DNA of 64,000 nt from Oculina patagonica (lineage: Eukaryota): positions 43,772,001-43,836,000 of the forward strand of contig NC_135761.1 in assembly GCF_052425735.1 (NCBI RefSeq), given 5' to 3'. Position 1 is the stretch's first letter. Every line of letters starts with the position of its first letter. Positions 19,863 through 46,282 of the stretch are shown in pieces. A program made the translations under genes and the position numbers. A model generated the notes under the pieces. The model was not told the DNA's origin. It saw only the letters and a program-made list of their open reading frames with translations, and searched no databases.

Positions 19863-20787
19863 TTAGCGGCATCCACACGTTACTACGGACATGTTTGGGA
19901 AGTCCTGCTTCTGGACTTGGTCGTGCTCATCAAAGTAGAGTATGCTCTGGGGTCGCAGCGATGAAGGCACGCAACAGGGAGCTGGCACAGTTGCAGGCTC
20001 AACCGAATGCAAGAGCCCCTGTAAGATTGCATGGTTTGTGGGGCTTAAGTGAGCACCCATGACGGTTGGACATTCATCATCGCAGTAATTTGCTTTGAAC
20101 CCAGCCGGAGCAATAATCCAATTATCTTCCTCGCCATAAATTCTGGAGAAGTCGATATATAAAGCTTTCCTACTACAAGTGTTGCGTCTTGTCCTCGAGG
20201 GGCGGTCGCCTGTCGTATACAAACAGAAATAACTGGGTTCAAAATTTGAAATTAAAGAAAAGTTTTATAGATACTATCTTATAAGCTGTGCTAATCTAAA
20301 GCGAAAATAATTGCTCTCAAAAATCATTTTTTTAGTCGATGCCACTTCAGGTCAGTCAGGAAAGCTTCATTCTTCTTCTGGGGATATAGCGCGTTTTTTT
20401 GAACCAACGGAACTTGTCAAAACCCATTTTTTTAAAAAAATCATGACCAGCCCCTCATAAACCTGCTTCTTCAAAACATGCCCTCGACGGGCCGGGAATG
20501 GCTTTCAAACCTTCATTTTCAAATTCCTGGATGCTGTTGTCAGATGTCATCATTCCGGTCCCCTCAGATTCATTGACTTGTTTATTAAACAAGTCAAGCA
20601 CGAACTGTGGTATTTTCTTTTATAACCCCTTTTTTGGTTTAGGAGGAGTTTTCAAGCCCAGTATCTGCAGCATGGCCTTTTCCACTGCTTTAGCTACTTC
20701 TGCCTCTTTGGCCGTCAAAGGTGGGTTCGGTTCTCCCAGACATATCGTTGTTCCAAAGAATAAACAACACAGCAAAGAGAGGAACAT
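19863..20787 (-). pseudogene. TGF-beta/BMP-family ligand, copy 1 (exons 20787-20511, 20209-19863; 207 codons) with a very short prodomain; in-frame TAA at codon 56
   Basis: Signal peptide MFLSLLCCLFFGTTICLG; straitjacket motifs KAMLQILGLKTPPKP and IPQFVLDL; phase-1 intron; furin site RTRR; mature domain C..LYIDF..WIIAP..YCDDEC..TNHA..CCVP..MSV.TCGCR. Nonsense codon at 20620-20622. Confidence 0.9.
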
Positions 20788-21455
20788 CTTTAAAGCCAAA
20801 CTCGAAATGCCTAGACATTGAAAAGAAAACAATGTTAGTGTAATGGCCGGCATATTTCTTTGTCCTCACAGCGGTTCCTGGACACAGCGACAAAATGCTG
20901 GCCAATTAACCTGTTGCTAGGAATGACAGTGACCATCACTGCATAATTTGGCACTCTAATGTTGAAGTGTTAGAATCATGTTACCTGAACTTCCCAAGTG
21001 CACCATAACTCGATAGAGCACAACTACAATAATAAACCAATTGTTTATAACACTACCGCTGGAAACGTACATCAAATCCTGCGCCAAAGCTCAGGGTGCT
21101 CGAGGAAAAAAAGGGGACAAAACGATTTGCCCACGCTTTGAGCTTGCACTAATGGATAATGGTGCGCGTTTACCTATACTGGATTTGATTGCACGGCTCT
21201 GCTAGCTATGTTCTAATTAACAATTAAACTACGAGCCCGAGTTTTCTATGAGCGAATAGTCAACGAGGCGCAGCCGAGTTGACTGTCGCTCATAGAAAAC
21301 GAGGGCGAGTAGACTTATTGTTTTAGTAGAAATTAATTAACTCTTAAAGGACTGCAGTCCAAAAACTTACAATTTTACGTCCTTATAAGCCAAAAATGAA
21401 GAAAAATTAATCTTTTAATGAGCAACGAGCGCGCGATCGTTTTCTATCAGCGATT

Positions 21456-22250
21456 ATATAATAACCTGAATTCTACGCGCATTTTGATTGGTTCTTACCT
21501 ATGATCTATTAGAGTACAGACACATAGATGACGTCAGGCGGTGGTGTGACTCGCGCGCGTGATCAGATGTCATAGTCCAAATCAGAGTTGCCGGCAAAGT
21601 TTTTCAAACTCGCGGGGCCACAACAATGCAAAGCAAAAAAGTTCCGCTTAATTACAAATCTACAGTGAGAAATAATACCCAAGCATCGTTCACCTTTCGA
21701 AGCATTTAACTGGGCTAAACAAGCTTCAAGAAGACAGTGAATTATTCGAGAAATTATCAAAATCTGTATGAAAGTGTTTGACCAATGTTGTACTGTTGGA
21801 AGACGCCACGGGAAACAAATGAAAAGCGGATGAGCGCTTAGGTAAATGCTTACAGATTTGAACAACTTTCCAAATCGGAATAAAGGTTAGTTTTTTCATT
21901 GACTTTTAATTTACCATTTTTCTGTTTATTTAATCGGCTTAATAGTGCTTCGTGGCTACGGAAACTTTATCGTGAAATGAAAACAACTCAACTCACTTTT
22001 GGTAGCGGCATTGCTCACACTGAAGTGTACTGAAGTCTTGTGTTATTATATAAAACAAATCGATTCCATTTTGCCGTGGGTCTGTTCAGTTATAGATCAC
22101 AGAAGACGTCAAAATGTGGTATGAACATCAGTGACCCACTCGCCTAGCCGCTCGTGGGCCACTTTTCTGTTCATACCACATTTTGACGTCATCTGTGATC
22201 TATAACTAAACAGACGCACGGCAAAATGGAATCTATTTGTTAATTTATAT
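21456..22250 (-). mobile_element. Non-autonomous element with a ~190-bp terminal palindrome, nested in the 21218 element
   Basis: Long inverted arms at 22053-22243 around CACTCGCCTAGCCGCTCGTG; TATATA at both flanks. Confidence 0.65.
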
Positions 22251-23877
22251 ATAGCGGCTGTATACGCGCGAAGGAATTCTAGCGCCGTGCATTAGCTTTT
22301 ATAGAACATAGCTAAAAACAATAGAGGTCCGGTATCGGCTGGTTGTGCGAATTGTGCGAATTCTCGTTGTTATTGTTGTTTAAACGATCTTTGATGCAAC
22401 AAGATTTCATCAGGAACGTCTACTTTCTAAAACAGAAGTGAGACAGTGCCAAAGAAAGTGACAGATTAAGATAGAATTTTTGAAATTTATTTCTCTTCAG
22501 TTTGGCGATGTGTACGCTACCATTTTGTAGCTTTGAGGTAAGGAAAAATTTTTCGTTGAAGTTGAAAAATTACTGGGAAACGTATACGCATGTAAAATTT
22601 CAATGAAGTTCAAATTTCGGAGAAAGGGCCATGATATGAATTATGAATGAAATGGTATCTTGGTTCATTAATGAAGAAGTCACCAATAAAAAAAGGATAT
22701 CTGTCAATTTTCTAATACTTCGTGCATTCGTCACTGCGAGTCTTGTCGTAGGTTGTATATTCGCCGAGATTCACTTCGCCTTCGGCGAATAATTGTGAAA
22801 TAGAACATGAAAACCCATTTTTAAATGGTAATTGGATGCACTGTGGCTTAGAGCCTTAGTCGCTCGTGGCAATACCTGATAGCGAATCCCGCATGATTGC
22901 TTAAAAAAAAACTTTGTTCAAGTATCAATGTATATTCAACTCTCTCTATAACGGACAACTTCGGGACCATAATTTGGTGGCCGCAATAGAAAAGAGGCTG
23001 CCATTGCATCCATTATCGCAGCAATTTTTCTTCTTTATAAAGAGGAGGAAGAAAGTATGAAGACTGTAAGGGATTTGCCGAATGTTTTGGCAGTGCTTTC
23101 CACACAGGACAGGAGACACATCCCTCGAATCACGGGCTATGCCGTCCGCCATCTTGAATTGGATTTTCATTCGCAACATTCTGTTCATTCTGCCCCTGAG
23201 AGCAGAATGGATGGAATGGCGTTCTGTCCATTCTGGAATACAAATGCGGGATAGAAAAACGCGCGCATTTTACATTCGGACCATTCTCATTCCAGAATTT
23301 TGAATAAAAAAGAGCGCCCTTAATGCTTTTTAGTTCTATTGCGCGGTTTGGGACTGGCACTAGTTACGCGCGCAATATATTTTTTTCCAACGCAAGCATT
23401 CTTCCCCCAAGCCCCGAAAAAAGATCACCATTTTACCATCACAATACGCTCCTTAACTCTCTCGTATCGCATTTCCACGCAGAACGCATCTATTGTGTAA
23501 TTCAATAATTTGATCGATTTCACAAGCACTCGTGGTCTGAAGGAAAGCAAAGAAATTGTCTGTCGTTTTTTATCGAAGGAAGGAAAGTTTTTTTTTCAGT
23601 GACAACTCTCGCCAGATCCGGCAACAATGTAAGTTTAATTTACCTCGGGTAGTTCTTTAGCTAATTTCTTGTTCCTAATTTTGTTAATCAATTATTTTTA
23701 GTTTCACGGTCAGATACAACATTAAAGGAAGCGTTCCATAAAAGAAATTGGTGCGATGTTCGTTTTGTCGATCAGTGGAAATTGCACGGTCCAGCTAGCG
23801 GCGGACGAGCGCCGCTATAGTGAAAATTGCAAGAATTCAAGAGTTTATCGGGAGTTTGTCGATTGCGATACAGAACC

Positions 23878-26800
23878 ATGGCGAAGGCAAATCCTACGAA
23901 TGAAAAGGTCACGAGCGAACAAAACGAAGACCATCAAGTCGGCGATAAAATGACTGATAGGGAAAGAAGAGAAAGAATCCCTACCGAAAAGGGCGACTCA
24001 CTTCGCCTGGAAAGGCTTTTTGAGGAGCGTAAGGCTGCAGGAGTCGCTCTAAGGAGGCAAAGTACGAAAGTCGAAAGTGAGCAGTTTATTCGAATCGTTA
24101 AAAGAATCGGACGCAAGAGTTCTAGAGCAAGAGCGTGACAGTCTAGACTTGTGTAGGGATAGGATGAATGACGCTCATCACAATTATTAAAAGGAATTGC
24201 ATTACACTAAGGAATCAGGTAAAGCGTACAAGTGGTTTGATATTCGGGATCACGAAAATTTCCAATGTCGCATTAGAATTAATGAAGCCTTGCTTAGTAT
24301 GGAAAGACAAACAAGTGATAAAATGTCTCTGGTTTCATCAAAATTTTCCAAGCGTTCCTCCTCCTCTTCAGTAAGATCTAGAAGAGCAAAGACAGCGGCC
24401 AAGGCAACGTGTCTTCAAGTAGAAATGGAGGCGGCGTATAAGAAGCTCGTAATGCAAAAGAAGTTAGCTAACGCAAGGGCTGAGGAAGAAACCATGCGCA
24501 AAATCGAACAAGAAGAAAGGCAAGAGGATTTCACCCAGATCTCGAAGCATGAAATACCAATTCTAGACGTGAAACCCAAGCTTCCACCCAAAGAAGAACC
24601 TGGTGAAACGAAACCGTTGCAAGATGACGGGATCTTAAATCCAAAAGCTCCGCCCGGTGAACCCAAAATGGCCCACCACCATTACGTGACTCAAAGCCGG
24701 AGAGTTACCACAGAGCAGACGAGCTAACCTCGGTGGTGAAGCTTGTCGCCAAACAACAAAAACTGAGTATGCTCCCAGCATAGCAGCCCCCGGTTTTCTC
24801 TGGAAAATACTTCGACTACGCGGCATTTATCAGTGCATTCGAAAGTTGGATAGAGTGCCGAGTGAGCGATCCGAAGCAGAGGCTCTAATATTTAAGCCAG
24901 TTCACATCTGGGGACGCTAAGGAATCAATTTAAGGCCTCATTAACCTCGACCATCCGGATTCCTATGGTAAGGCAAGACAGGTATTAAAGGAAAGATTCG
25001 GTCATCCTTATCGCGTTGCAAAGGCCTACAAGGATAAGCTGAATGCTTGGCCTCCGATAAAAGAAGGGGACGGCGAGCGTTTGCAACAATTTGGTGATTT
25101 CCTGGTGCTTTGCGGCCAAGCCAGGAAGACGCTAAAGTACATGGAAGGTCTTAACTCCGAAGATACCCTTAGAAGGATAACGTCAAAGTTGCCAAGTAAC
25201 ATGGGAGTGAAATGGTGTCGTTTTGCCAACAAGATGTTAAAATCAGGAGAAAGGCTTGCTACGTTTCATGACGTTGTCAATTTGTAACGCAAGAAGCAGC
25301 CCTGGCAACTGACCCAGTATTCTCACCTGAAGCCCTCAAGGAAGCAAGAAAAAACGAGTTCACTAGCTGTAGCAGCAGTGACAACAACACCAACAGGAAC
25401 ACAACCTGGCGAAACAATGGAAGAAGAGACAAGAGTGCAAGTAGCTTCTCGACAAGTGCCACACCTCACGAAGATCAACCGCCACCATGTTCTTCATGTC
25501 CATTCTGTAACAGTCAGCAACACGATCTGGAGAAGTACTCAAGTTTCAAGAAGAAGACTGTTCAAGAAAAAAGAGCATTTGTCCAAGAAGCTAGAATATG
25601 TTTCGGTTGTTTCTGCTACGGCCACATGTCAAGAAGATGTCGAAACCGGAAGGTGTGCAAGACATGTAGCATGCCCCACCCGACCGTCCTTCATGATGAA
25701 AGCAGAATTTCTCCCAAGCAAAGTAGTGAAGACCAAGCAAGAGTTGTTCAGGCAGCTGAAGCAACTAGCAGCTGTACAAGTACCTGTAATGCTACTGGAG
25801 TCATCGATGCCATCATGAACTTTATGATTGTTCCGGTTCGAATGTACCACCAAGACAACCCCGAACGACAAGTGGTGATTTATGCGCTACTCAAACCAGC
25901 TAGTAACGGAACTTTCGTTAAGGAGAGCGTACTCGAAGAACTGCAAGTTAAGCGGCCACTTTTCAAAGTCCGGGAGGGTGGCCGCTTAATAGAGGTCGGA
26001 CTGTATTTCGTTCCTTGAGTACGTCTTGTGAAGCTTGATGTGGACCTCTCTATCCATTCTTTCCACGATAAGACCGCTTACTCTTCGAGTAGGAACTACT
26101 TCTGAATCATGCATTGTGTTCAACTTCAATTGAGTCTAATGGCAGTAAACATGATTTTATTGACTCTATATAGCAAAATGTTTTTAAAAAGTGAACATAT
26201 ATAAAGATAAATCCAAAATTCATTGTAACAAAACATCAAGTGCATTTCCAGCCGATGTATAGTTCTAGCTCTAATTCAGAGGGCACGTAGTTGAAATGTA
26301 CAGTATTTCTTCAGGTTGAAAATGTACAGAAAAATATGCAAAACATCGTTGACAAGTTTCTTAAGCCTTTTTGCATCAACAGTTAGTATGTAAAAAAATT
26401 AGCTCAAGATATTTCACGGACGATATATATCATCTGTCACCATTTCGCTTGGAAAGATAATTTGCTGGCCGCTTAATAGAGGTAAAAACCCATATAAATA
26501 ATACACTTGTGACAGCAAAAAGGTGGCTGCTGCCGCTTAATAGAGGTGGCCGTTAAATAGAAGTATCAAATACAGCAGTTCAGTGACAAATAAATCGGGA
26601 CTTTCGAAAGTGGCCGCTTAATGGAGGGTGGCCGCTTAATAGGTGGCTGCTTAATAGAGGTCGGACTGTACCATCGAGAAGAAACGAGATCCCAACACCA
26701 GAGTCGGCAGCAAAATGGCCACACCTAAGTCACTTAGCCAACAAGATTTACCCGTACCAAAACGATCTGCAAGTGGGACTTTTGATTGGCTTAAACTGTC

Positions 26801-29648
26801 CAAACGCCATAAAGCCGAAGCAGGTCATTCCTGGTAGGAGCAGCGATCCTTATGCCATCCGTACCCTCCTTGGTTGGGACATCATTGGTCCAGTGACAGG
26901 AAGTACCACCACAGAAGATTCGGATGTCTTATGTCACAGAGTTGCTGTGAAGGAGATTGGCAGCGAAGAATTTTCTTCCCATAGTTTTGTTGTTGAGGCA
27001 CGCGTAAAGGAAATCATCTCTCCAGAAGCAGTTAAGAGAATGTTCGAGCGAGATTTCAATGAAGGGAAACACGTGGCTCAACAAACCCTTTCCATGGATG
27101 ATCGAAGATTCATGGCGAAAGTTAAAGAAGGAATCACCCATCGTTCAGACGGACACTATGAACTGCCATTGCCACTACGAAATGAAGCGTTAGCCCTACC
27201 GAATAACGAGAAACGGTCTAAAATCTGTACCTTCCACAAGTGAGGCAAAGGAGCTCATACCCAAGACTAAAGAAATGTGTCGGCGCAGATGATTCAACCT
27301 GCATAAATTTACAAGCAACAAAAGAGAAGTCATCGAGTCCATACCAGTGGAGGATCGTGCGAAAGGCATTAAGGAGTTGAATCTCGAGAAGAATGAGCTG
27401 CCTATGAAAAGAGCGCTTGGTGTGAGTTGGTGTATCGAGTCAGACGCTTTCAAGTTCCAGATCGTAATGCAAGATCGCCCTTTAACGCGAAGAGGAATTC
27501 TGTATACTATTAGCAGTGTGTACGATCCGTTGGGGTTCCTGGAACCTCTAATCTTGACAGGAAAGGGCCTTCTACAAGATCTGTGTAGAGGTAAAGTGGA
27601 ATGGGACGACCCTATTCCCTAGAACGTAAGATCGCGTTGGCTGAAATGGAGGGATGCGTAACACCACTTAGAAGAACTCTCCGTTCGCAGATGTTTCAAA
27701 CCAGAAGGTTTCGGAACGGTGATGTCAACCCAGCTTCATCACTTCTCAGACGCAAGCACGACTGGGTATGGCCAGTGTTCATACGTTCATAAGGTAGACG
27801 ACAAAGGCCAGATCCACTGTTCCCTGATTATGCGCAAAGCAAATGGAGACACGTCGAAACGAAGTGTAACCCAGCCGATGATGCCTTACGTGGTATCACT
27901 GCCAAGGAAATCGTTGAAAGTTCAAGATGGATCTCAGGGCCAGAGTTCCTTTGGACGCCCGAAGACCAGTGGCCACAACCCCTCAAGGATCAAGACCTTG
28001 TCATCTTATGCAACAAGTACGCAAGAGCCATGGAGCCTTGCTGAAAGTTTAAGCTACTTCTCGGATTGGCACAGGGCTTGTAGAGCCGTTGCTATCTGTC
28101 TACGCTTCAAGCAAAAGCTCCGTCAACTGGCGTACTCCAAGAAGGAAAGTTGTGCTGAATCAGTCAAACGTCAATAAAGGCCTGCCCTGACAGTGGAAGA
28201 GCTTTTATCAGCTGAAAGGGTGGTCCTTAAAGCAGCCCAAAAGGTCGCCTTTTGTTAAAGCCGTTTCAAGAAGGGCAAGATGGATCATCTGCGCAGCAGA
28301 AGAAGAGAGCCATGAAGGCAACGAGCTCGTTGTACCGCCTCGACCCATTCTTTGACCATGATGGAGTACTGCGCGTTGGTAGTCGGATCCAGCGAGGGGC
28401 TTTCACAGATGAAACAAAGTTCCCAGTCATCCTTCCGAGGAAAGGCCACGTGACAGGTCTGATCATTAAGTACTACCATGAGAAGGTTCAACATCAAGGT
28501 CGTGGAATGTCCTTAAACGAGATCCGAGCTAATGGATTCTGGGTTATTGGCGGAACATCAGCTGTGGCATCCAAAATTGCAAAGTGTGTCACCTGCAGGA
28601 AGTTACGAGGTGCAGTCCAGGAGCAGAAAATGTCCGACCTTCCGGAGGATAGTCTGGAACCGGCACCCCCTGTACCTACTACGCCGTCGACTACTGTGGA
28701 CCATGGTATATTAAGGAGGGACGCAAGGGAGTAAAGAAGTATGTTGCCCTCTTCACGTGCATGGCATCAAGAGCCGTACATCGCGAAGTCTCGAATTCCT
28801 TGGAAACTGACTCGTTCTTCCAAGCCCTGCGTCGCTTCATCTGCAGAAGGGGTCCTGTGCGTCAGTTGCGCAGTGATCAAGGAACGAATTTCATTGGAGT
28901 AAAACGAAAGCTCCGCGACGCGTTGCTGTCTATGGATCAAGGCAAGATCAACGCTGAGATGTTGAAAGAGAATTGTGATTGGATGACCTTTAAGATGAAT
29001 CCCCCATCAGCGAGCCATGCAGGAGGAGTATGGGAGCGCCAAATCAGGACCATTCGCAACGTATTATCAGCCCTCCTGCAGAAGAGTGCAAGTTCCCTGG
29101 ATGGAGAGTCCTTTCACACGCTGATTTGTGAGACCGAAGCGATCGCGACCCAGAGTCACTATCTCCATTGACGCCAAATCATATCCTCACAATGAAAGCA
29201 AGGCCGGTTCTACCACCGCCTGGCGTTTTTCAAAGAGAGGACCTGTACTCAAGGAAACGTTGGCGAAGAGTTCAGCATGTCATGCGAATTCTGGGACCGT
29301 TGGAGGAAGGAGTTTCTTCATAGCTTACAAGAGAGGTCCAAGTGGACAAGGCCACGCCGTAACATGCAAGTTGGCGACGTGGTTATCGTTAAAGACGACA
29401 ACAAAAAGAGGAATCCGTGGAGCATTGCTCGTGTGATAAAAAAGTATCCCAACAAGGCCGATGGACTGGTGCGTAGTGTCAAGGTGGCAGTTGGAGACCC
29501 TGATCTCTCCAGCACTGGCAAGAGAGTGCACCCTCCATCAGTTCTGGAAAGACCCATTCAAAAGCTTGTCCTGCTGCTGCCAAGAGAGGAAAGACCGGGA
29601 TTCCAGCATGGGGAGCCATTAAACGAAGACATTCAGAAGAAGGACTAG
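23878..29648 (+). pseudogene. BEL/Pao gag-pol polyprotein, disrupted (stops, frameshifts, RT core deleted, MITE insertion)
   Basis: Gag FSG..DYAAFISAFES; Zn knuckles CFGCFCYGH..C and CKTCSMPHPTVLH; protease YALLKPASNGTF (K in place of the catalytic D). The RT jumps from LPNN to GLKSVPS, so YVDD is lost. RNase H LHHFSDAS; integrase HEKVQH..CVTC, VDYCGP, RSDQGTNF, GGVWERQIR; C-terminal [20 protein letters not shown]. Confidence 0.92.
25947..26670. mobile_element. Tc1/mariner-like MITE inserted into BEL pol (left end truncated)
   Basis: Repeated GGTGGCCGCTTAATAGAGG motifs; the terminus ..GAGGTCGGACTG|TA interrupts the protease region. Confidence 0.75.
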
Positions 29649-29809
29649 ACACGGACATGTCAACGAACTCTGAACTTGTTAGTTTAATTATGTTTCGTTT
29701 TGCTTTGAAATACGGTGATTTCAAGGGGAGCCATGTAAGTGCCCCTATGGCACGGTTTATCCCTTGTTTTGATTTTGTTGTTTTGATTCAGTAATTGTTT
29801 AATCAATAG

Positions 29810-35720: not shown

Positions 35721-37210
35721 GATGTTGATTGTGTCCCAAATCTTGTTTGTTTGTTGTATTGATGTTGTGTTCGAATTATAAAACCTATGCGCGATTCTTG
35801 GCAAAATATATAGTTTCATTATAACAAAGATAAAAGATAAGATTCTTTCTGATATTTTCCCTTTCGTTCGGTGAGTTCGTTGTGCCCGAATAGCTCATCT
35901 ACTGTTCGACAGCGGGCATTTCGACCCCGACCCCTCCACCCTTAGCCATTGCTAAAATTGTGCATTTCAAGTGCAGTTTATTTATTTAGTGTCGCTCGAG
36001 ATATTCCGTCCAAAAACACAGAAATATACCAAGCTTCAACTTAACTTAAAATAACTGGAGGGAGAACTGTTGATATTGGAATGCCTTAGTTAAACACAAG
36101 GTAAGTCCAGCTTTGAACTATTTCAGCAAAGTAACAACGTTCGAATGTATTACGTGACGAAGATATAATGTAACTTGATGTTGAATATTTACTTTGGAGC
36201 AGATCATAATCTTTCACGTTATTCAGATCAATATTTAACTGCACTTGTATTCTAAGAATATTTTGCTGTTTTGTCGCTTTATGAATAGTTTAATCGGCTT
36301 GAAATGCAAAATAAAATAAGTGTGCGGCTTCCTTTGGGCATATTGATAAAGAACTGTTTCAAGGCCGTTCTTTGTTTATATCAGTTAAATCAAAGCAGTG
36401 ATCGAGAGCCTTCTACAAAATTATTCAAACGATTTTTCCTCTTTATTTAGGGTACTAAATCGTTGTTTGAAAACAAAATTTGCTTACATTTTTTTCGAAG
36501 AAGACGAAAATGTCAACGCTTTATCTCCACATTGTACCACGACGTTCATGTTGATGGTTGCATCATACCGCAAAGTACAGCAACTTGTTAAATTGTTTTC
36601 TCTTTTCCAAATAGAGTTGCCCATATTTTTATTTCTGATATCAAATCATCTATAAAAACTCTACATGTCTGATAAATGGCACGTTCTCAATCGACATAAC
36701 ATGGGAGATATCGGTCTTTCGTTATACCGTAAATTTATGAGTCGAAAAATCATGCTGGAAGTACCGTACAGCATCTTGCTCGTTCAAAATCCAAACTTTT
36801 CGTTTCAGCAAATGTTCGATACAGAACGAAAGTAAAAAGATAGCTCTTTAAGGTGGTGCAAATGGTTTTTGCTAAAATGTTATGTTAGGCTCGGAGATAG
36901 AGTAACAAGAAGTCCTTCGATCCGCCATATTTGCTAGCTCTCGAAGCCGATCGAAAATGGCTGTCTCCTTCATTTCAAAAGTAAAAATTTATAGAACTTT
37001 AAAACATCCGTTTCGTACTAAGGACCCCAAATCATGATTACATGCAAAATTTCAGCCAAATCGGTGAGGTACCGTGGCCGCGACCTTTTAAAATTGTTCG
37101 AAACTTCAGAGTATAACACTTAATAGCTTAAAGTAGGATACTTATCAGTTAGGGGTTTTAAAACAATTCACAATAAAAACTAACGGTAAAAATTCGCGAA
37201 TTTTCACCGA

Positions 37211-37318
37211 ATTTTGAAACGGATTTTGAAACGGATTTTGAAACGGATTTTGAAACGGATTTTGAAACGGATTTTGAAACGGATTTTGAAACGGATTTTG
37301 AAACGGATTTTGAAACGG
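37211..37318. repeat. Perfect 12-bp tandem repeat (ATTTTGAAACGG)x9
   Basis: Directly visible. Confidence 0.95.
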
Positions 37319-37960
37319 TTGGCTTGGTCCATTAGACGTAGGAACTGACTTTGACCTGCGAATCGTAGAATCGACAGGTGGACGAAATAATCGGAGTCGA
37401 ACAAAAACGAAGATTACATTTAAAACGTTTACAGAGGGAAAGCATTTATTTTAATGTTTTGTTTGTACGTGCTAATCTTAAACGTAACCTCGGTATAAAT
37501 CAGTGCTCTTTGCGTGATGTAAGCCGTTCAGGTTGTAGTCGCCTTGAAATTAGCCTGTGAACAGCATTTCCCATTTCCTCAATACCGGAAGTTTTCATAC
37601 TAATCCAAACCTAGATCTCCAAACACATGATTTTTCATGATGTTAAGAACCGAAATAGAACCACGAGGAATCTTTTGAAAACAAAACATAAACAAAAAGG
37701 CTTTAAGAATATCTTTTCAAGGCCGACGTCTGCAGGAAGTTTCATCAAAAAGGATTGAGCCTATTTGTAACGCCTGGAAGACTTTCTCAGACAATGAAAC
37801 TAAAATAAAATTGTAATAAATGAAATCAGCCACGGATTTACTACAAGCTTTTATACCATTATATGACGAGTGCCGAGAAACCTTATTTTACTTATTTGTA
37901 GAGCAGACTTGGTCTAAAGACATATTAGCGTGTCTATTTTAGATCGATTTCTGCTTTTGT

Positions 37961-38284
37961 GGCCCGAGTTCGATTCCCGGGCCCGGCGTCATATGTGGGT
38001 AGAGTTTGTTGTTGGTTCTCGTCCTTGCTCCGAGGGTTTTTCTCCGGGTTCTCCGGTTTTCCTCCCTCCACAAAAAGTAACACTTCTAAATTCCAATTCG
38101 ATCGGAAAATCCGAGGGCCACAGGTTTATTAGTCGCAAGACTATTAAGTGCTACCCTCATAAAAGTAGCTGTACAGTTAGCTGTACAGTTTTAATATTTT
38201 ATTGTAATTTACCCTGAAAAACCTTTTTTGGAGAGGCAAATAAAATCTTTATCTTTATCTTTATAAAATAAAGACGATTTATTT
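37961..38284 (+). mobile_element. 5'-truncated tRNA-derived SINE (V-domain-like body)
   Basis: B-box GAGTTCGATTCC; V-SINE-like GGTTTTTCTCCGGGTTCTCCGGTTTTCCTCCC; AATAAA/ATTT tail. Confidence 0.7.
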
Positions 38285-38432
38285 TTACTTCATTTACTTG
38301 TGAATTCGTATTGTCTTGGCGGCATCACGCCAAAGGTGCGGGTGGCTCCGATAGGATAATGTGCGAGCAAAATCCGATCTAATTTTGTAGGATGTGAAAC
38401 AAGTTAATATAACGCTGAAAACAAATTTCATT

Positions 38433-38640
38433 ATGGTAATGGTAATGGTTCTTGTATAGCGCATTTACAAAGCTCAATGCGCTTCACAGTTAGAGTCACG
38501 GGACGAGAACGGACATCAGCACATCAGGCGCCTTTGGCAGCCGCTATCCGTCCATGTATATGAACTCGTCCCACCACCCAACCCGTGCATACATGTGAAT
38601 AGGCCAGACCACAACACTGGGAACTCCGTGCCCTTCTCAT
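38433..38640 (-). mobile_element. 3' fragment of a SINE related to the 52192 SINE
   Basis: The reverse complement contains GGGCACGGAGTTCCCAGTGTTGTGGTCTGGCC and AAATGCGCTATA followed by an (ACCATT)n tail, matching the 3' part of 52192-52550. Confidence 0.6.
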
Positions 38641-41562
38641 TGCTTATATAAATTTCTTTTCAAACAAGAGTTCGTCGCATGTGCTAGATCTGCGTTGTCA
38701 TACTGTGCCGTGTTGTTGTGTGTAAATCGAAAAATGCGAAACAAGAAGCTACTTCACCTCCAGCCACGCCCTTCTCTTTTGTTTGACTCCATTGATTTTC
38801 TTTACCTGTTTTCCATTCACCGAGTCACTGGTCACACTTTTCGTCCCTGACTAAGCCAAACCAATCATTTTATTTCACGAGGTTACTCATTGATGACCGA
38901 GATCGGCACCTGTTCCTAATCATAAATTAACAATAGAGGTAAATTGTTTAACGAGTTAAAGTGGCTGATCCGCTTTGTTACACTAACTAACTTGTTTTTT
39001 GGTCACACACATAAAGGAAATAATGGGATAAGCAACAAATGAAAATAAATTTTCCCCCATTAACGAATTTTCTAATTCTTATCTTGCTCGTTTTTGTTCG
39101 ACTCATGGTTTCGTCCACCTGTTGACGATTTCACAAGTCGCAGGTCAAAGTCAGTTCCTACGTCTAGTGGACCAAGCCAACCGTTTCATTTCATGACGTT
39201 TTGTGAAATAAAAGCCCATTGATAAACAAAATTATCACCTGTTTAAATTGGTCGTGTAAACTAATAAATAATCAATACTAGAATATCGTGTAAGACAAAC
39301 AAGGGCAATCTCTGCGCATATTTACAAAATAAATGGATTTTTTTATCGCATCAGAAACGTACAGGGACAAAAAAGTTCTTCTCTCCGTGAGCAGCAACCA
39401 ACTTATTTTTTTTATTTTCTCTTGCAAAGCGGGTCTTTCGCTTAACACTGAATTCTTGCAAAATGAGTGAGCAAAATTGGTGCTGGTTTTCTTTTCCTTT
39501 TATGGTAATAAAAAGAAGTGAAATTACAGCTAGCTATTAAAAATTAACTACGTGGATGCTTTATCAAATAGCATGAAACAACGCAATTTTATCAGTTTTC
39601 TCACAACTTCCTCAAAGGCAAGATCTTAAAATCGTAAGTATTAATAGCTTAACATCGCTTATCGCTTTTTAAAATAGAAACGTTTACAAATTGCCCTTTC
39701 TATTTATTTTAGTTTCCTAAAGATAACCACATTATAGAAAAATATAACTTACATCACTAAAACAGCGGAGGGTTATATCTTTATTTTCATTTTTCCCTTC
39801 AATAAGGGCAAAAATGTTGTATTAATGGTTTGACAGTATTAAAACTATTGCTCTTCATTGTTTACACAATTGCTATGTTGGTTTTAAGGGCAATTAGTCG
39901 AAAGCCTTTTTCTTTTGTTAAGCAGAATCGTGTTATAGTAACACGCGGTGTAATACATTAGCTATTCCGTCTAATAATACTTAATGAGAAATTTTTTACG
40001 TTTTGGAAACTCTGAAGAATGGCGAAACCACCGCAAACAAGAACAATTTATCTAACAAAAGAAAGTACTGTGAGTTTTCGACGGTTATTACTGTTGATAA
40101 AATAAATACACGTATAAGCGCTTTCTCAGGGCCCAATCCATCTTGAAATCTAAGTGGAAGTAGGCGGTGACAATTTTTTCTTTCTATTATTGCGTTTTGC
40201 CATGCTTATTATCTTTCACTTATTTCCCTTTTATTTAGCTTGAAAATATAAAAATTTCGAGTTTCTGTTTTAATAAAAACGGAGAATGTTTGGTGTCGAC
40301 TAAGACCGTCCAAGTCACTCACATGTGAGACGATATCGATTTGATATTCTATGGCCCTGAATTGATTTTATTCGATGTGAGGTGTTTGTCTTTCTCGCAA
40401 GTTGATTTGCCGTGAGTTGATATCCTTTGGCAGTGAATTGATTGTTTTGCTGTGAGTTTATTTTGATAAGATTGCCGTGAGCTTATTCCGACTTTAAGCC
40501 GTAAATTGCCCGGCAGAAACTAATTGAAATTCACATGGGGTATCTAAGTCAAGTTGTCTAAAGTGCTGAACGACGAAGACAAAAAGAAAGTTGCATCCTA
40601 GCATGCTAAACGTTATTTCCTATCCAATTATTCTCCGTGGACATTTCTAACAACGATTCTTGCTGCTATCAAGGCAGTTGTTAGTATTTTGCACTGCATG
40701 CATTATCTGCAGGCTTACTCAAGTTAAATTTTTACATGCAATTCTTCTTTATTTAGTATTATATAATTCTTCGTTTATTTAGTATGTTTTAATAAGTTTT
40801 GCTTTACAACTTTCAGTGTTGTTTCAATTTAGTATCCCAAAATTGTTTTCCAGTTATGTCGTATCGGTCTATGCTATTTTTTTTAACGTTATGAAACTAT
40901 TATGGAACCAGAATTGGAAGATTTAATGGCGTTATTTGACACCAGCTGATTGGCGATGCAGAAACTCTGCTTTGGATTTTTTTTTTTCTGAATTCACTTA
41001 ATAACGATGTTAAGAGCGCGCGTAGAATCTTGGTTGTTTTACAAAATACCGGCAAAGACAATCGGAAAAGAGGCCAGCTGTAACATAATTCACAGATGAG
41101 GCGGTAAACGTGGCAATATTGAGAAAATTCTACCAGTCTTCTTACAATTTCTTCAGAGGCAATTGCTAGGAATCATAGTTATTGCTGCCGATAGGCAGTC
41201 TTCATATTCTTGAAAGCATTCGAAAATTTTGGTTCAGTTGGTTCAGTGGTTCGGATCAAGATACGGGATATTCAAGAAGCAGCGAATCAGCGGTCATTTT
41301 CTATAAGCAGCAAACGTTATCCAATCAGCGACTTGCTTTCATAAAACCATGAAGAACCGAACCGACTGAATTCAGGACGATATTTCTCACCTCTTGCTAA
41401 CAAGAAATGCATTTTTTTGAGTTCAAAATGGAATGAAATAACCCTAAAGAACACTCGACCGCCTAAAAAGAGAACATTGAGGTCTTTTAAAACCTAAAAA
41501 GGCGATGAAGCAGGACAGCTTCAAGACTTAGAAACCACTGCAGTATGGTAAATATCTTCAAA

Positions 41563-42305
41563 TTAACAATTGACATCAGTTTTTTATGCGTCTACCTTGT
41601 TATTCATGATAAATTGCGTCATAACATTGTCAAAGTTTGTTGTAGATCCACTGGCCGCTAGGCGAGTGGATCTACAGCAAACTTTGACAATGTTATGACG
41701 CAATTTATTATCAATAACAGGACAGACGCATCAAAAAATGATGTCAATTTGTTTTTTACAATAACAAAAAGCCAAAACTGATTTTAAAACGAAGGAAAGA
41801 AATGTACGAGGAAGATGCGATTGTTGTACGGCCGCAGAATCTAAATTTCGTCGCTGTAATTCGGAGAATCATAGCCTCGTAATATAAAAGTTTGGTAAGA
41901 ATACGGCCAGAAATACAAGAGAAAATTCGAATCGTTCAACTAACCTTTAATCCAGTGAAGTGTTCACAAAATAATCCGCCAAAACCCGGTCCAGCTTCTT
42001 AATTTCATTTACAACACACATACCCGCTCAACGCCGATTTCCAGGTCTTAACATCCTCATCTTTTTGCTCTCAGGTTGCAATAGTTTCTTAAGTTTTAAC
42101 CGATAAATTTTAGATAATTTCCTCATTCAAGACTTCTAGTTTCGTGGGAAAATTCTCGTCTCATCAAGAATACAGCGCTAAATCAGTGCTGAAAAGTTTG
42201 ACAAAACCTTCGCTGAATGCGTTAGCAACGAGTTTCATGCGTCTGTACTATTATTGACAATGAAAATTAGCCAATCAGCGCGCCAGACTTCACTCAGATA
42301 TTGTA
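41563..42305 (+). mobile_element. Non-autonomous element with a ~190-bp terminal palindrome (hairpin-core family)
   Basis: Arms ...GATAAATTGCGTCATAACATTGTCAAAGTTTG.TGTAGATCCAC / GTGGATCTACA.CAAACTTTGACAATGTTATGACGCAATTTAT... around TGGCCGCTAGGCGA. Confidence 0.65.
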
Positions 42306-43309
42306 AAATGTTGATTCGCTTTATAAAAATCGTTTAGCTGATTTCTCGAAACTAGATTAAATAACTTCAGTTTGAAATTTCGTTTGGCTTTGCTATGCTG
42401 TGTTACACATTGCTTTCCGCGAGCGTCTGGAAAATTATAATCCCTTGCGTGTGTTCCCGCACGCAACAGCGACGCAAGGAACTCGAAAGTCGTTTGCTTC
42501 TAACAGCAAATGTACAGTGTATATTTAATGAAAATTTGTCCAACCTTTTAATTTTATTTTGTACTTTTAATTCGAAGGTTAAGTGTACATTATAAAAGCG
42601 GCGTTGTATAAAACCTTGAAAAATTTGCATAACCGTATTGAAATTTAATAGCCGAGTTGTTTTCATTTGAGATGAGTAGGAATTTTGATTTTCAAGATTG
42701 TGATATGACTTACAGGTATACTTCATCTGCAACTTTTTTTTTCTTTTTACATAAGAAAATATTAATATACATTTCAAATGAAGTTATTTTTCTGTACATT
42801 CATATATTCTTGAAGTGTAACGGCAGCATTTCACTTCTCATTAAGAACTTCTAGTTGTTAAGTTTCATCTTTTCTGCTCCACCTATGGGATAATGTCTAA
42901 CAAATATCCATGACATCAAGGACTGGAGCTGAGCCTGGGAGAGACATCATGGCGGTGTCCACAGCGGTGCCTTGGTACAGAAAGTGGGCAAAATTTTTTG
43001 CAGCAGTAGCATACTTTTTTACAAGCTTTTTCAGGACTTTAATCGTTGCTAAAGAAAAAGAAAACATATTCTACAAGTTGTAACAATAGGGAAATTTTTA
43101 GGCATGTATTGCCTTTCCTCTCCCCGTTTGTTTTCGGGATAACACACTAGAGCTCAAAATTATATAGTGAATATATGCCATTCTTAGCAACAACAGGTTG
43201 ATATGCCAGCCTTTCGTCACTGTGTCCAGAAACCGTTCCGAGGACAAAGGAATTTACTCTAACATTGTTTTCTTTCCAGTGATCAGGCAATCTGCGTCTG
43301 GCTTTGAAG

Positions 43310-45309
43310 ATGTTTATCGCTCTGCTGTGTTGTTTATTCTTTGGAGCAACCATATGTTTTGGGGAACCGAACCCTTCTTCAACGGCCAAAGAGGCGAAAT
43401 TGGCTAAAGCAGTGGAAAAGGCCATGCTGCAAATACTGGGCTTGAAAACTCCTCCTAAACCAAAAAAGGGATCAAAGGACAAAATACCGCAGTTCATGCT
43501 TGACTCGATTAATAAACAAGTCAATGAATCTGCGAGGAGAGGAATGGAGGTGTCTGAAACTACCAACCAAAAATTGGAAAATGAAGGTTTGCAAATCAAG
43601 AGATAATACACGTGTACGACAGAGAATATTAAAGACATATCATTTTAAAATGTCACTTAGCTAAAGCAAATGCCTTGTTAGTGGGGCGCGCTTATTGCAG
43701 TTAAGCGTGACGCGCTATAAACGGGGACAAAGCGGTAGACTGTGTAGTGTAGCAAAGAAACAATCTTCCCTTTAAAAGTCATTTTAGTATCATCATTATT
43801 ATTATCAATATACAGGACCAAATAACACCAAGATAACTTACAGATTTAGATAATACAAGTGTGCTTCATTCGTATTGAAAATTTTATACTTTAATGGGGC
43901 ATAAGTGTTGTCCAAGTTTAGTTGACAATTGCAGTAATTTCTCTGAAAATATACTGATCAAAAATACACCTGACACCTCATTGATAACCGTTATACTTTA
44001 TAAAACGCCACTTCGTAATTGAACTTAGGCGTAGAATTTCCTCACTACTTCAGCTAATTTAGCTCGACGGGAAAAATATGAATGAGGTAAAAAGATATTC
44101 GTTTCGTTTCTTGTAAAACAACAAAAAGTGTGATTTTTTTTTTATCCTCACCTTGTGCGTTTCCTTCAAGTTGCAAGTATCTATAAGTTTCAATCCGAAT
44201 TTTTGGCCGCGATTTTTTCAATTCAATTTGATTTATTTCCGGACAACATCCGTTTGGCAAGACATCTAGAGAAACTGCACAAAACTGCGTTAATGTCTAA
44301 GCTTGCTGTACGCAACTGGATGAGGTTTTCACCGGGTCAATAAATCTAAACCTAAGTGATTAAAATTCATTGGATGATGATCCGTGGACCAATCAACTGC
44401 AGAGCAGATAATGCAAAAGCAGCCCTTCTGGGAGACATTAGGAACCTTCACATTGAAGTACGAGTACGAGATTGAGTAAGAGTAAGACTTTCGAATATCA
44501 ATCCAGTTACGTTTCCCGAGTCCCAACTCCTTCCTGCTGTTGACCAGTTGAAAAGGAGAATATCGGTGTGAGATTGGTGTGAAATGAGATAATCGAAACC
44601 ATAAGCACTAGGTTTGAAAAATCATACTCCTACCCAATCTCGTACTCGTACACCGATCCGAAGGACCCTATTTCAAACCCGCCAAGTACCGGTTTTGAAG
44701 AGGCAGTTGCGTATATATAACGATAACAATTATAATAATTAAAAAAAAAAACATAAGATGGACAAGTTTCATTGGTTCACGAAAACGCGCCCTTTCCCTG
44801 TGGAAGAATAAAGCTTTGCTCGCTTACTTGATGTTGGTTTGTCGGAACAATGATCCGAGCAATTATTTAAGCTTTTTCAGCATTGCGGCTAAGAAAGTCT
44901 TTATTGAACCTCTATGGGATTTCCATGACATCAAGTATTAAACCCGGTTATTTTTGTTTGTACAACAGGGGATCTATCCGCGAGGACAAGTCGCCGCACT
45001 TGCCAGAAGCATTCTTTATATATCGACTTCAACAGACTTTGGGGTGAAGATAATTGGATCATTGCTCCTGCTGGTTTTCATGCATATTACTGCGATGGTG
45101 AATGTTCAGTTCCCATGGATGCTCACCTGAGCCCCACAAACCATGCAGTCTTTCAAGATTTCTGGCATTCGGTTGAGTCTACCGTGCCAGGCCCCTGCTG
45201 CGTGCCTACAGAGCTGCGATCTCAGAGTCTCATCTACCGTGATGCCAACGGCGAAATCAAGGATCGGGTTTACTCAGACATGTCTGTAGAAACATGTGGA
45301 TGTCGCTGA
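43310..45309 (+). CDS. TGF-beta/BMP-family ligand, copy 2 (exons 43310-43586, 44969-45309; 205 aa) with a very short, arm-less prodomain
   Basis: Signal peptide MFIALLCCLFFGATICFG; straitjacket KAVEKAMLQILGLKTPPKP..IPQFMLD; phase-1 intron GAAG|GTTTG..ACAG|GG; RTSRR cleavage site; all 7 Cys, including CxGxC (CDGEC), CC and the terminal CGCR. Exon 1 length (277 nt) is identical to copy 1. Confidence 0.9.
44438..44670. mobile_element. MITE in the intron of TGF-beta copy 2
   Basis: TAGGAACCTTC..GTACGAGTACGAGATTG / CAATCTCGTACTCGTAC..GAAGGACCCTA inverted ends; absent from the copy-1 intron. Confidence 0.6.
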
Positions 45310-46122: not shown

Positions 46123-46282
46123 AGATCTATCAAACACTAGAGAAAGTATCTCATCGGCTATCCAAACACCTCGGATTTCGTCAAAAATACTCTGCTGCGC
46201 GTCGTCACGTGATGATTTTCAACTCTCCTCTCGGTGTTTGGATATCCCGATGAACCACTGCCTCATGTTTTTGAAATATTAC
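46123..46282 (-). mobile_element. Terminal palindrome of a hairpin-core non-autonomous element
   Basis: TCATCGGCTATCCAAACACC / GGTGTTTGGATATCCCGATGA arms around ACTCTGCTGCGCGTCGT. Confidence 0.6.

What the first reader, a model, noticed from the sequence alone, without database searches (positions are those of the whole stretch)
19863..45309. Pair of 'arm-less' minimal TGF-beta/BMP precursors (~205 aa): straitjacket-only prodomain fused to a cystine knot
Seen: both paralogs have two coding exons. Exon 1 (277 nt in both) encodes a signal peptide, the alpha1 helix/latency-lasso motif (KAVEKAMLQILGLKTPPKP, compare BMP2 FELRLLSMFGLKQRP), the alpha2 motif (IPQFMLD, compare VPPYMLDLY) and a ~25-aa linker. 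Exon 2 reaches the furin site within about 9 codons, followed by the mature 7-Cys domain. The copy-1 intron is only 301 bp and aligns with the 3' part of the copy-2 intron, so there is no room for hidden exons. Established: BMP, activin and TGF-beta prodomains are typically about 250 aa or more and contain a beta-sandwich arm domain that supports folding, dimerisation and matrix binding. Inference: this is a lineage-specific TGF-beta subfamily with a prodomain of about 80 aa that has lost the arm but kept the straitjacket, implying a different mode of folding, latency or diffusion, or obligate heterodimerisation.
Basis: partly seen in the sequence, partly recalled or inferred. Interest (0 to 1): 0.9.

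Follow-up and report, generated by a model that had tools for sequence, protein, structure and literature searches.

The report
Arm-less BMP2/4-derived gene family in coral
A stony coral (Oculina patagonica) carries a tandem family of at least 13 BMP-like growth-factor genes that lost the large "arm" of the pro-region through a deletion but kept its short N-terminal wrap; one of the two window copies is intact and transcribed, and the other is broken by a stop codon.

Summary
Copy 2 (43310-43586 and 44969-45309, + strand) is an intact two-exon gene for a 205-aa precursor. It has a signal peptide, alpha1 helix, latency lasso, alpha2 helix, a ~25-aa linker, an RTSRR site and a 7-Cys BMP domain. 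It equals the GenBank and RefSeq models. A high-depth RNA-type contig joins exon 1 directly to exon 2.

The "pair" is part of a tandem array on one chromosome (43.44-43.87 Mb). I count at least 10 intact two-exon short genes, 3 broken ones, and a further short locus on another chromosome. The signal peptide, the phase-1 donor, the last ~40 nt of the intron, the acceptor and the first codons of exon 2 all align with the canonical 375-aa BMP2/4 gene. The family therefore arose by duplication plus an in-frame deletion of ~170 codons (the arm) inside exon 2.

Constraint is reversed. The mature domain has dN/dS 0.6-2.2, against 0.02-0.06 in canonical BMP2/4. Several members lack a furin site, and the conserved GWxDW motif is remodelled. 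A Tara Pacific coral metagenome scaffold shows the same architecture.

No description was found in the literature searched. I rate it a new variant of a known kind. Its function is untested.

The parts
43310..43586 (+). Copy 2, exon 1 (277 nt, phase-1 donor GAAG|gt). Encodes the signal peptide, alpha1 helix (KAVEKAMLQILGL), latency lasso (KTPPKPKKGSKDK), alpha2 helix (IPQFMLDSINKQV) and the linker.
   Evidence: (PF00688 positions 14-66 of 242, E 5e-7). Identical to the N-terminus of P0158. AF2 helices at residues 24-42 and 61-78.
43587..44968 (+). Copy 2 intron (1382 nt, GT..AG). Holds an interspersed repeat at about 44391-44711. Its last ~200 nt are homologous to the copy-1 intron, and its last ~40 nt to the canonical BMP2/4 intron.
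   Evidence: no transcript coverage in X2 except over the repeat; no arm-like coding.
44969..45309 (+). Copy 2, exon 2. Encodes G-DLSA-RTSRR (proprotein-convertase site), then a 102-aa 7-Cys BMP-type cystine-knot domain and the stop TGA.
   Evidence: PF00019 E 2.6e-29; closest solved relative is human BMP2, E 1e-33; TM 0.94 and rmsd 1.4 A to BMP2 in 1es7.
20511..20787 (-). Copy 1, exon 1 (277 nt). Same layout as copy 2 but with an in-frame TAA at codon 56 (window 20620-20622) just after the latency lasso. The open part encodes only signal peptide + alpha1 + lasso (55 aa).
   Evidence: The same TAA is present in an independent Logan contig, L066.
20210..20510 (-). Copy 1 intron (301 nt, GT..AG).
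19863..20209 (-). Copy 1, exon 2. Encodes G-DRPS-RTRR (good furin site), then an intact 7-Cys domain and the stop TAA.
   Evidence: PF00019 E 1.2e-28. dN/dS is 0.38-0.52 against its relatives J and L066.

Best explanation
SHOWN.
- The window holds two members of a tandemly expanded gene family in Oculina patagonica. I count at least 10 intact and 3 broken copies at chromosome C4 43.44-43.87 Mb, plus a short locus on C13.
- The family descends from the canonical two-exon BMP2/4 (dpp-type) gene. After duplication, an in-frame deletion of ~170 codons inside exon 2 removed the whole beta-sandwich arm of the prodomain.
- Exon 1 was left in place (signal peptide, alpha1 helix, latency lasso, alpha2 helix). 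So were the conserved phase-1 intron and the first codons of exon 2, which now run almost directly into the cleavage site and the cystine-knot domain.
- Copy 2 is intact. It, or a near-identical allele or orthologue, is transcribed and spliced exon 1 to exon 2, at a contig depth at least equal to canonical BMP2/4 in one transcriptome-like run.
- Copy 1 is broken by a stop codon and is most likely a pseudogene (about 65%).

INFERRED.
- The products are secreted, disulfide-linked dimers with a BMP2-like fold.
- The retained alpha1-lasso-alpha2 straitjacket acts as the minimal intramolecular chaperone and sits on the type I receptor (wrist) side of the growth factor.
- Loss of the arm leaves the type II receptor (knuckle) face unshielded and removes prodomain-prodomain contacts.
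- Members without an RXXR site would keep the straitjacket covalently attached.
- The wrist motif is remodelled and the mature domain evolves more than 10 times faster than in BMP2/4. I therefore judge them more likely diversified modulators of BMP signalling, or ligands with new specificity, than redundant BMP2/4 agonists.
- My rough split is: signalling ligand ~35%, antagonist or modulator ~30%, new non-BMP role ~20%, no function ~15%.
For: Gene model:
- Searches give the exons and splice sites.
- P0158 (XP_078364348.1 / KAL9978268.1) is identical to my copy-2 model.

Transcript:
- In run X2, a contig of depth 851 joins exon 1 to position 44967 onward with the junction AATGAAG|GGGATCT.
- Exons are covered at depth 300-1700, and the intron is uncovered apart from a repeat.
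- The contig that one search identifies as canonical BMP2/4 mRNA has depth 235 in the same run.

Family size:
-. All members use a phase-1 donor (G/A)AAG|GT, and most share the acceptor ACAACAG|G.

Origin:
- Canonical gene at C13:11.398 Mb, 375 aa. Its signal peptide MLIARLWCLFFGATICLG compares with MFIALLCCLFFGATICLG in the family.
- The same donor (..FDHE|G versus ..LENE|G), ~40 nt of alignable intron 3' end and the first codons G-D-(H)-L-P/S-A are shared.
- The mature domain is closest to human BMP2.

No arm:
- Pfam partial hit and tblastn of the arm against the window.

Straitjacket placement:
- AF2 model pLDDT 81.5.
- VIA alignment covers 125-142 residues over model 28-205 with 5ntu, 8vsc and 5hly.

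Dimer:
- ipSAE 0.66 against a best control of 0.00, with Cys169-Cys169 in contact. The runs agree in at least 58% of contacts, and the partner pLDDT is at least 61.
- The mark was reached by 21 of 30 proteins solved as pairs of one chain and 0 of 23 solved as single chains. This may reflect memory of solved BMP dimers.

Selection and maintenance:
- Exon 2 dN/dS is 0.6-2.2 and exon 1 is 0.2-0.6. Canonical BMP2/4 gives 0.02-0.06 for the mature domain and 0.13-0.27 for exon 1.
- Ten ORFs stay open with all 7 Cys across dS up to 0.7.

Other species:
- Tara Pacific scaffold L072 has a 232-nt exon 1, a 247-nt phase-1 intron and an exon 2 starting EDLSVRTTSSTC.
Against: - No functional data exist.
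- High dN/dS of the mature domain, loss of RXXR in A, B, C, D, G and the C13 member, loss of BMP2 Trp28 in all members, and three broken copies (c1, J, E) are also what a decaying gene family would show.
- The spliced contig carries a 30-nt in-frame linker deletion and 9 differences in exon 2. It comes from a run labelled as another organism, so it proves the splice for a near-identical allele, paralogue or orthologue rather than strictly for this copy.
- Two shallow poly(A) runs of the same species label gave no reads on the gene.
- The AF2 placement of alpha1/alpha2 rests on an alignment dominated by canonical BMPs.
- Signal-peptide cleavage and convertase cleavage are read from sequence only.
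Confidence: 0.75

Rival explanations
1. Deletion debris. The array is a set of non-functional, decaying duplicates of a BMP2/4 copy that suffered a large deletion. Transcription is noise.
For: - Mature-domain dN/dS is 0.6-2.2, far above canonical BMP2/4.
- Copy 1, J and E are visibly broken.
- Furin sites and the GWxDW motif have been lost in many members.
Against: - Ten copies keep 186-205-codon ORFs, both splice sites and all 7 cysteines across dS up to ~0.7.
- Exon 1 has dN/dS 0.2-0.6.
- Transcript depth is comparable to or above BMP2/4 in one run.
- The same architecture is retained in another coral sample at ~63% protein identity.
Confidence: 0.12
2. Incomplete gene models. The real transcripts include arm-encoding exons located elsewhere, so the prodomain is of normal length.
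For: Only one spliced contig was seen, and it came from a run of another organism label.
Against: - The contig joins exon 1 directly to exon 2.
- GenBank and RefSeq models give 192-208 aa for six members.
- There is no arm homology in the 64-kb window.
- Introns of 247-301 nt in several members leave no room.
- Reading frames fit only the direct phase-1 junction.
Confidence: 0.03
3. Copy 1 is not a pseudogene. Its lineage was re-purposed to encode a stand-alone secreted alpha1-lasso peptide (55-56 aa), a free prodomain fragment that could bind and regulate family ligands. Exon 2 would then be untranslated or used from an internal Met.
For: - c1 and L066 share the same TAA, and J has a 53-nt deletion at the same spot. 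All three end the ORF right after the lasso.
- The alpha1-lasso peptide is identical in c1 and J despite synonymous differences.
- Exon 2 dN/dS is 0.38-0.52, so it is not clearly neutral.
Against: - Transcription of copy 1 is not tested.
- The nucleotide identity of this segment among c1, J, c2 and K may reflect gene conversion.
- The tests for omega below 1 are marginal (p 0.06-0.12).
- A simple young pseudogene lineage explains everything.
Confidence: 0.1

Closest known systems
Canonical BMP2/4 (Dpp) of scleractinian corals (here C13:11.398 Mb, 375 aa; Montipora orthologue P0006/P0159 'bone morphogenetic protein 2-like')
   Same: - Near-identical signal peptide, and the same alpha1, lasso and alpha2.
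- Same phase-1 intron position, with homologous intron 3' end and acceptor.
- A 7-Cys mature domain that is closest to BMP2.
   Different: - About 170 codons encoding the arm are missing.
- The mature N-terminus is reduced to 1-3 residues before the first Cys.
- GWNDW is replaced by [YWF]G-x(3-4)-[WFY].
- The mature domain evolves more than 10 times faster.
- The furin site is often lost.
- The family has many tandem copies rather than a single gene.
Pro-TGF-beta1, pro-activin A, pro-myostatin and pro-BMP9 procomplexes (PDB 8vsc, 5hly, 5ntu, 4ycg; definitions in PMC5798290)
   Same: The straitjacket elements (alpha1 helix, latency lasso, alpha2 helix) are predicted to sit on the growth factor as in these structures.
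   Different: These all have a jelly-roll arm domain that contacts the growth factor and, in TGF-beta, dimerises. The coral family has none, so any latency or shielding must come from the straitjacket alone.
GDNF-family ligands (GDNF, neurturin, artemin, persephin). Cited from general knowledge, not tested here.
   Same: They are distant TGF-beta-superfamily cystine-knot ligands with short (~50-90 aa) pro-regions and no arm.
   Different: - Their pro-regions are unrelated, and they use different receptors (GFRalpha/RET).
- They are ancient and conserved rather than recently derived from a BMP by deletion.
- They are not in the BMP sequence class.
Myostatin prodomain alpha1-helix inhibitory peptides (synthetic). 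Cited from general knowledge, not tested here.
   Same: They show that an isolated alpha1 segment of a TGF-beta-family prodomain can bind and mask its growth factor. This is the activity proposed for the retained straitjacket.
   Different: They are artificial fragments of a different subfamily. Here the minimal prodomain is natural and genomically encoded.

Membership tests
TGF-beta superfamily, BMP class (Pfam PF00019 TGF_beta) | C-terminal cystine-knot domain with 7 cysteines, including the inter-chain Cys | tested here: met
   PF00019 matches full length at E 2.6e-29 (copy 2) and 1.2e-28 (copy 1). All 7 Cys are present in all members. The fold matches BMP2 with TM 0.94 and rmsd 1.4 A. The dimer model puts Cys169 against Cys169.
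TGF-beta superfamily, BMP class | N-terminal signal peptide and a prodomain with an alpha1 hydrophobic motif | tested here: met
   PF00688 hit to profile positions 14-66 (E 5e-7, above the gathering score). AF2 gives helices at 24-42 and 61-78. The signal peptide is read from sequence only.
TGF-beta superfamily, BMP class | Prodomain arm domain (beta-sandwich, ~150-200 aa) | tested here: not met
   Only 14-66 of 242 profile positions match. The precursor is 205 aa. No arm homology exists in the window. The direct exon 1-exon 2 junction is seen in a transcript contig.
TGF-beta superfamily, BMP class | Dibasic / RXXR proprotein-convertase site before the mature domain | tested here: inconclusive
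   Present by sequence in copy 2 and K (RTSRR), copy 1 (RTRR), H (KGKR) and I (RKR). Absent or weak in A, B, C, D, G and the C13 member. Cleavage itself is not testable here.
TGF-beta superfamily, BMP class | Conserved G-W-x-D-W wrist motif (BMP2 Trp28 and Trp31) | tested here: not met
   Trp28 is replaced in every family member. Trp31 is kept only in c2, K, c1 and J, and is F, Y or P elsewhere. An aromatic residue appears one position before the Gly.
BMP2/4 (Dpp) orthology group | One-to-one orthologue of BMP2/4 with a conserved two-coding-exon structure | tested here: not met
   The exon structure and exon 1 are shared, but the true orthologue is a separate 375-aa gene on C13. The mature-domain tree does not resolve the array's position. 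The family is a derived paralogue group, not BMP2/4 itself.
Processed or unitary pseudogene (for copy 1 only) | Disabling mutation in the coding sequence | tested here: met
   In-frame TAA at codon 56, shared with L066. The sister copy J has a 53-nt frameshifting deletion. Neutral evolution is not shown: dN/dS is 0.38-0.52 with p about 0.06.

The most novel reading that the evidence does not exclude
Corals have evolved a natural "straitjacket-only" pro-BMP family. If the proteins fold, this would show that the prodomain arm is dispensable for folding and secretion of a BMP-class ligand. In furin-less members the alpha1-lasso-alpha2 would stay covalently tethered as a built-in cap on the type I receptor site. 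The tandem expansion, with dN/dS near or above 1 on receptor-binding surfaces, would reflect diversifying selection for new receptor, antagonist or inter-organism specificities. The copy-1 lineage may even supply a free secreted alpha1-lasso peptide.
Probability: 0.2. Interest if true: 0.8.

Novelty: new variant of a known kind. Interest (0 to 1): 0.62.

Why it matters
The arm domain is treated as a universal part of TGF-beta/BMP/activin precursors. It is thought to be needed for folding, latency, matrix targeting and shielding of the type II receptor site.

This family is expressed, has many members, and removed exactly the arm while keeping alpha1, lasso and alpha2. That makes it a natural deletion experiment. 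It allows direct tests of what the straitjacket alone can do, namely chaperoning, masking of the type I site, and diffusion.

It also documents a simple mechanism, an in-exon deletion after tandem duplication, that produced a fast-evolving set of BMP-like ligands. BMP2/4 has been linked in corals to axis patterning and to the calcifying epithelium.

For annotation, proteins named "BMP2-like" or "DVR-1-like" in this genome should not be taken as BMP2/4 equivalents.

Tried and rejected
- Hidden arm exons. tblastn of the canonical 375-aa BMP2/4 against the whole window found only exon 1 and mature-domain matches. Nothing for residues 109-260 reached E<1.
- Other species by protein search. Word-indexed searches and the exhaustive phmmer search of 1.84 billion representatives returned full-length short proteins only from O. 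patagonica. Other short hits were fragments of canonical BMPs.
- The JGI metagenome scan found only a canonical BMP2/4 locus.
- Family exon-2 ORFs of the type GDISVRTITNQC exist in other Logan/ENA samples. No exon 1 was found within 2 kb on L070. The organisms behind these accessions could not be named with the tools.
- Poly(A) runs X9 and X10 gave no reads on the gene. They hold about 3.4 million reads each, so this is uninformative.
- Copy-1 expression. The word search shows many holders guessed to be DNA and only a 0.20 share in X2.
- A mini-intron or alternative splice that would remove the copy-1 stop. No frame-preserving GT..AG option was found by inspection.
- A chimeric origin (exon 1 from BMP2/4, exon 2 from another ligand) was considered because exon 1 dS (0.6-0.7) is much lower than mature-domain dS (1.4-2.4). 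I rejected it as unnecessary, because canonical BMP2/4 orthologues show the same ~3-fold difference, and the acceptor and first exon-2 codons are also BMP2/4-like.
- Literature. Seven full-text searches found no description of an arm-less coral BMP family. Subscription journals are not covered.
- The ESM Atlas look-up returned only generic TGF-beta clusters.

Full report
**1. What is in the sequence**

Copy 2 lies on the + strand.
- Exon 1 is 43310-43586 (277 nt). It runs from the ATG to GAAG|gt, a phase-1 donor.
- The intron is 43587-44968 (1382 nt) and ends ..acaacag|.
- Exon 2 is 44969-45309 and ends in TGA.
- The spliced product is 205 aa. In order it has MFIALLCCLFFGATICFG (signal peptide by sequence), an alpha1-type helix KAVEKAMLQILGL, the lasso KTPPKPKKGSKDK, alpha2 IPQFMLDSINKQV, a ~25-aa acidic and polar linker, G-DLSA-RTSRR, and a 102-aa domain with 7 cysteines.

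Copy 1 lies on the - strand with the same geometry.
- Exon 1 is 20787-20511 (277 nt), the intron is 301 nt, and exon 2 is 20209-19863.
- Its exon 1 contains an in-frame TAA at codon 56 (KKGL*KKIPQF; 20620-20622).

Pfam supports the partial prodomain.
- The profile sees only positions 14-66 of 242 of TGFb_propeptide in exon 1 (E 5e-7).
- It sees the entire TGF_beta domain in both second exons.

**2. The gene model is real and transcribed**

The genome is Oculina patagonica, going by the source names. P0158 (KAL9978268.1 / XP_078364348.1) is residue-for-residue my copy-2 model.

I laid public runs on 43000-46200. Run X2 covers only the exons, at depths of about 300-1700, plus an intronic repeat.
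- One contig of depth 851 runs from 43443-43548 through the letters AAATGA into 44967 onward. This gives the junction ..AATGAAG|GGGATCT.., exactly the predicted exon 1-exon 2 splice.
- That contig carries a 30-nt in-frame deletion in the linker and 9 differences in exon 2. Other X2 contigs are identical to copy 2 over 133-140 nt.
- X2 carries another organism label. The evidence is therefore for copy 2 or a near-identical allele, paralogue or orthologue.
- In the same run, the contig that I identified as canonical BMP2/4 mRNA has depth 235. The short genes are therefore not weakly expressed there.

Two shallow poly(A) runs gave nothing. tblastn of the canonical BMP2/4 protein against all 64 kb found no arm-like coding sequence.

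**3. It is a family, not a pair**

I searched the whole assembly with exon 2 and with exon 1 and then modelled each locus.
- Intact two-exon genes of 186-205 aa lie at C4 43.44-43.87 Mb. I call them A, B, C, D, F, G, H, I, copy 2 and K.
- Broken copies are copy 1, J (a copy-1 sister with a 53-nt deletion in exon 1, modelled by RefSeq as a 129-aa "DVR-1-like" protein starting at an internal Met) and the fragmented locus E.
- A further short locus lies on C13 at 27.05-27.09 Mb (P0005 and P0156, 197 and 208 aa).
- GenBank or RefSeq models exist for A, B, C/D, K, copy 2 and the C13 gene. The models for F, G, H and I are mine.
- All members use a phase-1 donor (G/A)AAG|GT, and most share the acceptor ..ACAACAG|G. 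Exon 1 is 214, 232, 250 or 277 nt long.

**4. Origin**

The canonical BMP2/4-type gene lies at C13:11.398 Mb and encodes 375 aa. It has two coding exons.
- Its signal peptide MLIARLWCLFFGATICLG is nearly the same as the family's.
- Its exon 1 ends ..NTIRAFDHE|G at the same phase-1 donor, compared with ..NSIQEFENE|G in copy 1.
- The last ~40 nt of its intron, its acceptor and the first codons of exon 2 (G-D-H-L-P-A versus G-D-L-S-A) align with the family.
- After these codons the canonical gene encodes the ~170-aa arm, RRRRKRR and the mature domain. The family goes straight to RT(S)RR-x-C.

The simplest history is a tandem duplication of BMP2/4 followed by one in-frame deletion inside exon 2.

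Other evidence is consistent with this.
- The mature domain is closest to human BMP2 among solved structures (E 1e-33, about 48% identity).
- A mature-domain tree of 28 genomic TGF-beta domains puts the C4 array in one weakly supported group (82/87). It puts the C13 short pair next to canonical BMP2/4 (93/88). Deeper relations are unresolved.

**5. Evolutionary regime**

I computed Nei-Gojobori estimates.

| Comparison | Exon 1 dN/dS | Arm dN/dS | Mature domain or exon 2 dN/dS |
|---|---|---|---|
| Canonical BMP2/4 orthologues | 0.13-0.27 | 0.23-0.27 | 0.02-0.06 |
| Short family | 0.2-0.6 | none | 0.6-0.8 typical |
| I versus C | 0.60 | none | 1.23 |
| Copy 2 versus K | 0.22 | none | 2.17 (15 non-synonymous, 2 synonymous) |

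- For copy 2 versus K, the contrast between exon 1 and exon 2 gives Fisher p = 0.02.
- The usual pattern (mature domain far more constrained than prodomain) is therefore reversed.
- Even so, ten ORFs, their splice sites and all seven cysteines persist across dS up to ~0.7. That argues against simple decay.
- The convertase site is good in copy 1, H and I. It is minimal in copy 2, K, F and J. It is absent in A, B, C, D, G and the C13 gene.
- The near-invariant GWxDW motif (BMP2 Trp28 and Trp31) becomes [YWF]-G-x(3-4)-[WFY].
- In copy 2 most of the knuckle residues (BMP2 Ala34, His39, Ser88, Leu90) are kept. Wrist residues (Trp28, Leu51, Asp53) are changed.

**6. Structure predictions**

- AlphaFold2 was run with a 67-sequence alignment and gives pLDDT 81.5. 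It predicts helices at 24-42 and 61-78, a disordered linker at 79-100 and a confident BMP fold.
- Foldseek matches BMP2 with TM 0.94.
- VIA-align aligns model residues 28-205 with pro-myostatin 5ntu (Z 11.6, 125 residues), latent TGF-beta1 8vsc (135 residues) and pro-activin A 5hly (142 residues). Mature ligands align over about 105 residues. The extra aligned residues mean alpha1 and alpha2 are placed as in known straitjackets. The definitions of straitjacket and arm are from PMC5798290.
- A homodimer test scored 0.66 against a best control of 0.00. It shows the canonical BMP interface with Cys169 against Cys169. The runs agree in at least 58% of contacts, and the partner pLDDT is at least 61.
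- The mark was reached by 21 of 30 proteins solved as pairs of one chain and 0 of 23 solved as single chains. Because BMP dimers are solved, this may be memory.

**7. Other species**

- A Tara Pacific coral metagenome scaffold (L072) carries a family-type exon 1 of 232 nt with donor CAAG|GTAAAG. A 247-nt phase-1 intron follows, and then an exon 2 starting EDLSVRTTSSTC... It is about 63% identical to member A in exon 1, so the arm-less design predates that divergence.
- Family-type exon-2 ORFs also occur in other Logan and ENA contigs.
- One of these, L066, is a copy-1-type gene with the same TAA.
- I could not name these organisms. I also could not survey annotated anthozoan genomes directly.
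- No full-length short protein from another species appeared in the exhaustive representative search.

**8. Interpretation**

Shown:
- a BMP2/4-derived, arm-less, tandemly expanded family;
- copy 2 is intact and expressed;
- copy 1 is broken.

Inferred:
- the products are secreted disulfide-linked dimers whose folding is assisted by the retained straitjacket;
- the type II face is exposed;
- the type I face is remodelled and possibly capped by alpha1, permanently so in furin-less members;
- the likely roles are BMP-pathway modulators or ligands with new specificity.

Decay of the family remains possible (about 12-15%).

**9. Novelty**

Seven full-text searches found no description of such a family. 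Databases only carry the automatic names "BMP2-like" and "DVR-1-like". I class it as a new variant of a known kind. Interest is moderate to high for TGF-beta structural biology and cnidarian evo-devo. It is tempered by the lack of any functional evidence and by signs of relaxed constraint.

Noticed in passing
window 20511-20787 (-); J at G000:C4:43851650-43851811; L066:3-170: All three copy-1-type sequences are broken at the same spot, just after the latency lasso. c1 and L066 share a TAA, and J has a 53-nt deletion giving KKGLI*. Each still encodes signal peptide + alpha1 + lasso (55-56 aa). The alpha1-lasso peptide is identical in c1 and J despite synonymous differences, and exon 2 stays open with dN/dS 0.38-0.52.
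   Followed up: partly
window 24197-29648 (+): A degraded BEL/Pao-type LTR retrotransposon lies between the two genes. It has fragmented ORFs with Peptidase_A17, Integrase_H2C2, rve and DUF5641 hits.
   Followed up: partly
window 44391-44711 (copy-2 intron): This segment has very high contig depth in both runs laid (250-720), while the rest of the intron is uncovered. It is probably an interspersed repeat that is transcribed elsewhere.
   Followed up: no
G000:C4:54.07-54.12 Mb and G000:C1187:0.45-0.48 Mb: A second cluster of about 10 TGF-beta-like terminal exons sits here (e.g. ..DACRKVDLFVDFADLGLYDRIIAPASFNAYQCKGKCSPTNHSLL..). They have a shortened pre-helix loop and form a strongly supported clade (100/100) in the tree. 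This looks like another lineage-specific expansion.
   Followed up: no
G000:C13:27046658-27087454 (P0005, P0156): A short (197 or 208 aa) BMP2-like gene with family-type exon 1. Its intron is ~21 kb and there is no convertase site at all (..VLGKEKGLCRK..). A second related exon 2 lies at 27087137 with TKTRR.
   Followed up: partly
L073:2514-3020 (ENA ERZ25073789 contig): An intronless 168-aa TGF-beta-like ORF (P0178). It has a signal peptide and a ~45-aa pro-region ending GNKR. It lies within 5 kb of two other TGF-beta-like ORFs in an unidentified eukaryotic contig, and may be an independent short-prodomain case.
   Followed up: no
exon 1 versus exon 2 of BMP2/4 and of the family (L058, L063, L065, window): Synonymous divergence of exon 1 is about 3 times lower than that of the mature-domain exon. 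This holds both between canonical BMP2/4 orthologues (0.375 versus 1.24) and between the family and BMP2/4 (0.6-0.7 versus 1.4-2.4). It suggests nucleotide-level constraint or gene conversion in exon 1.
   Followed up: partly
window 43549-43578: The transcript contig in run X2 lacks 30 nt (10 codons) of the linker, flanked by a GGA direct repeat. The linker length is polymorphic or differs between near-identical copies.
   Followed up: no
window 37204-37300 (-): A hexanucleotide-type tandem repeat that translates as (RFKI)n inside a spurious ORF.
   Followed up: no
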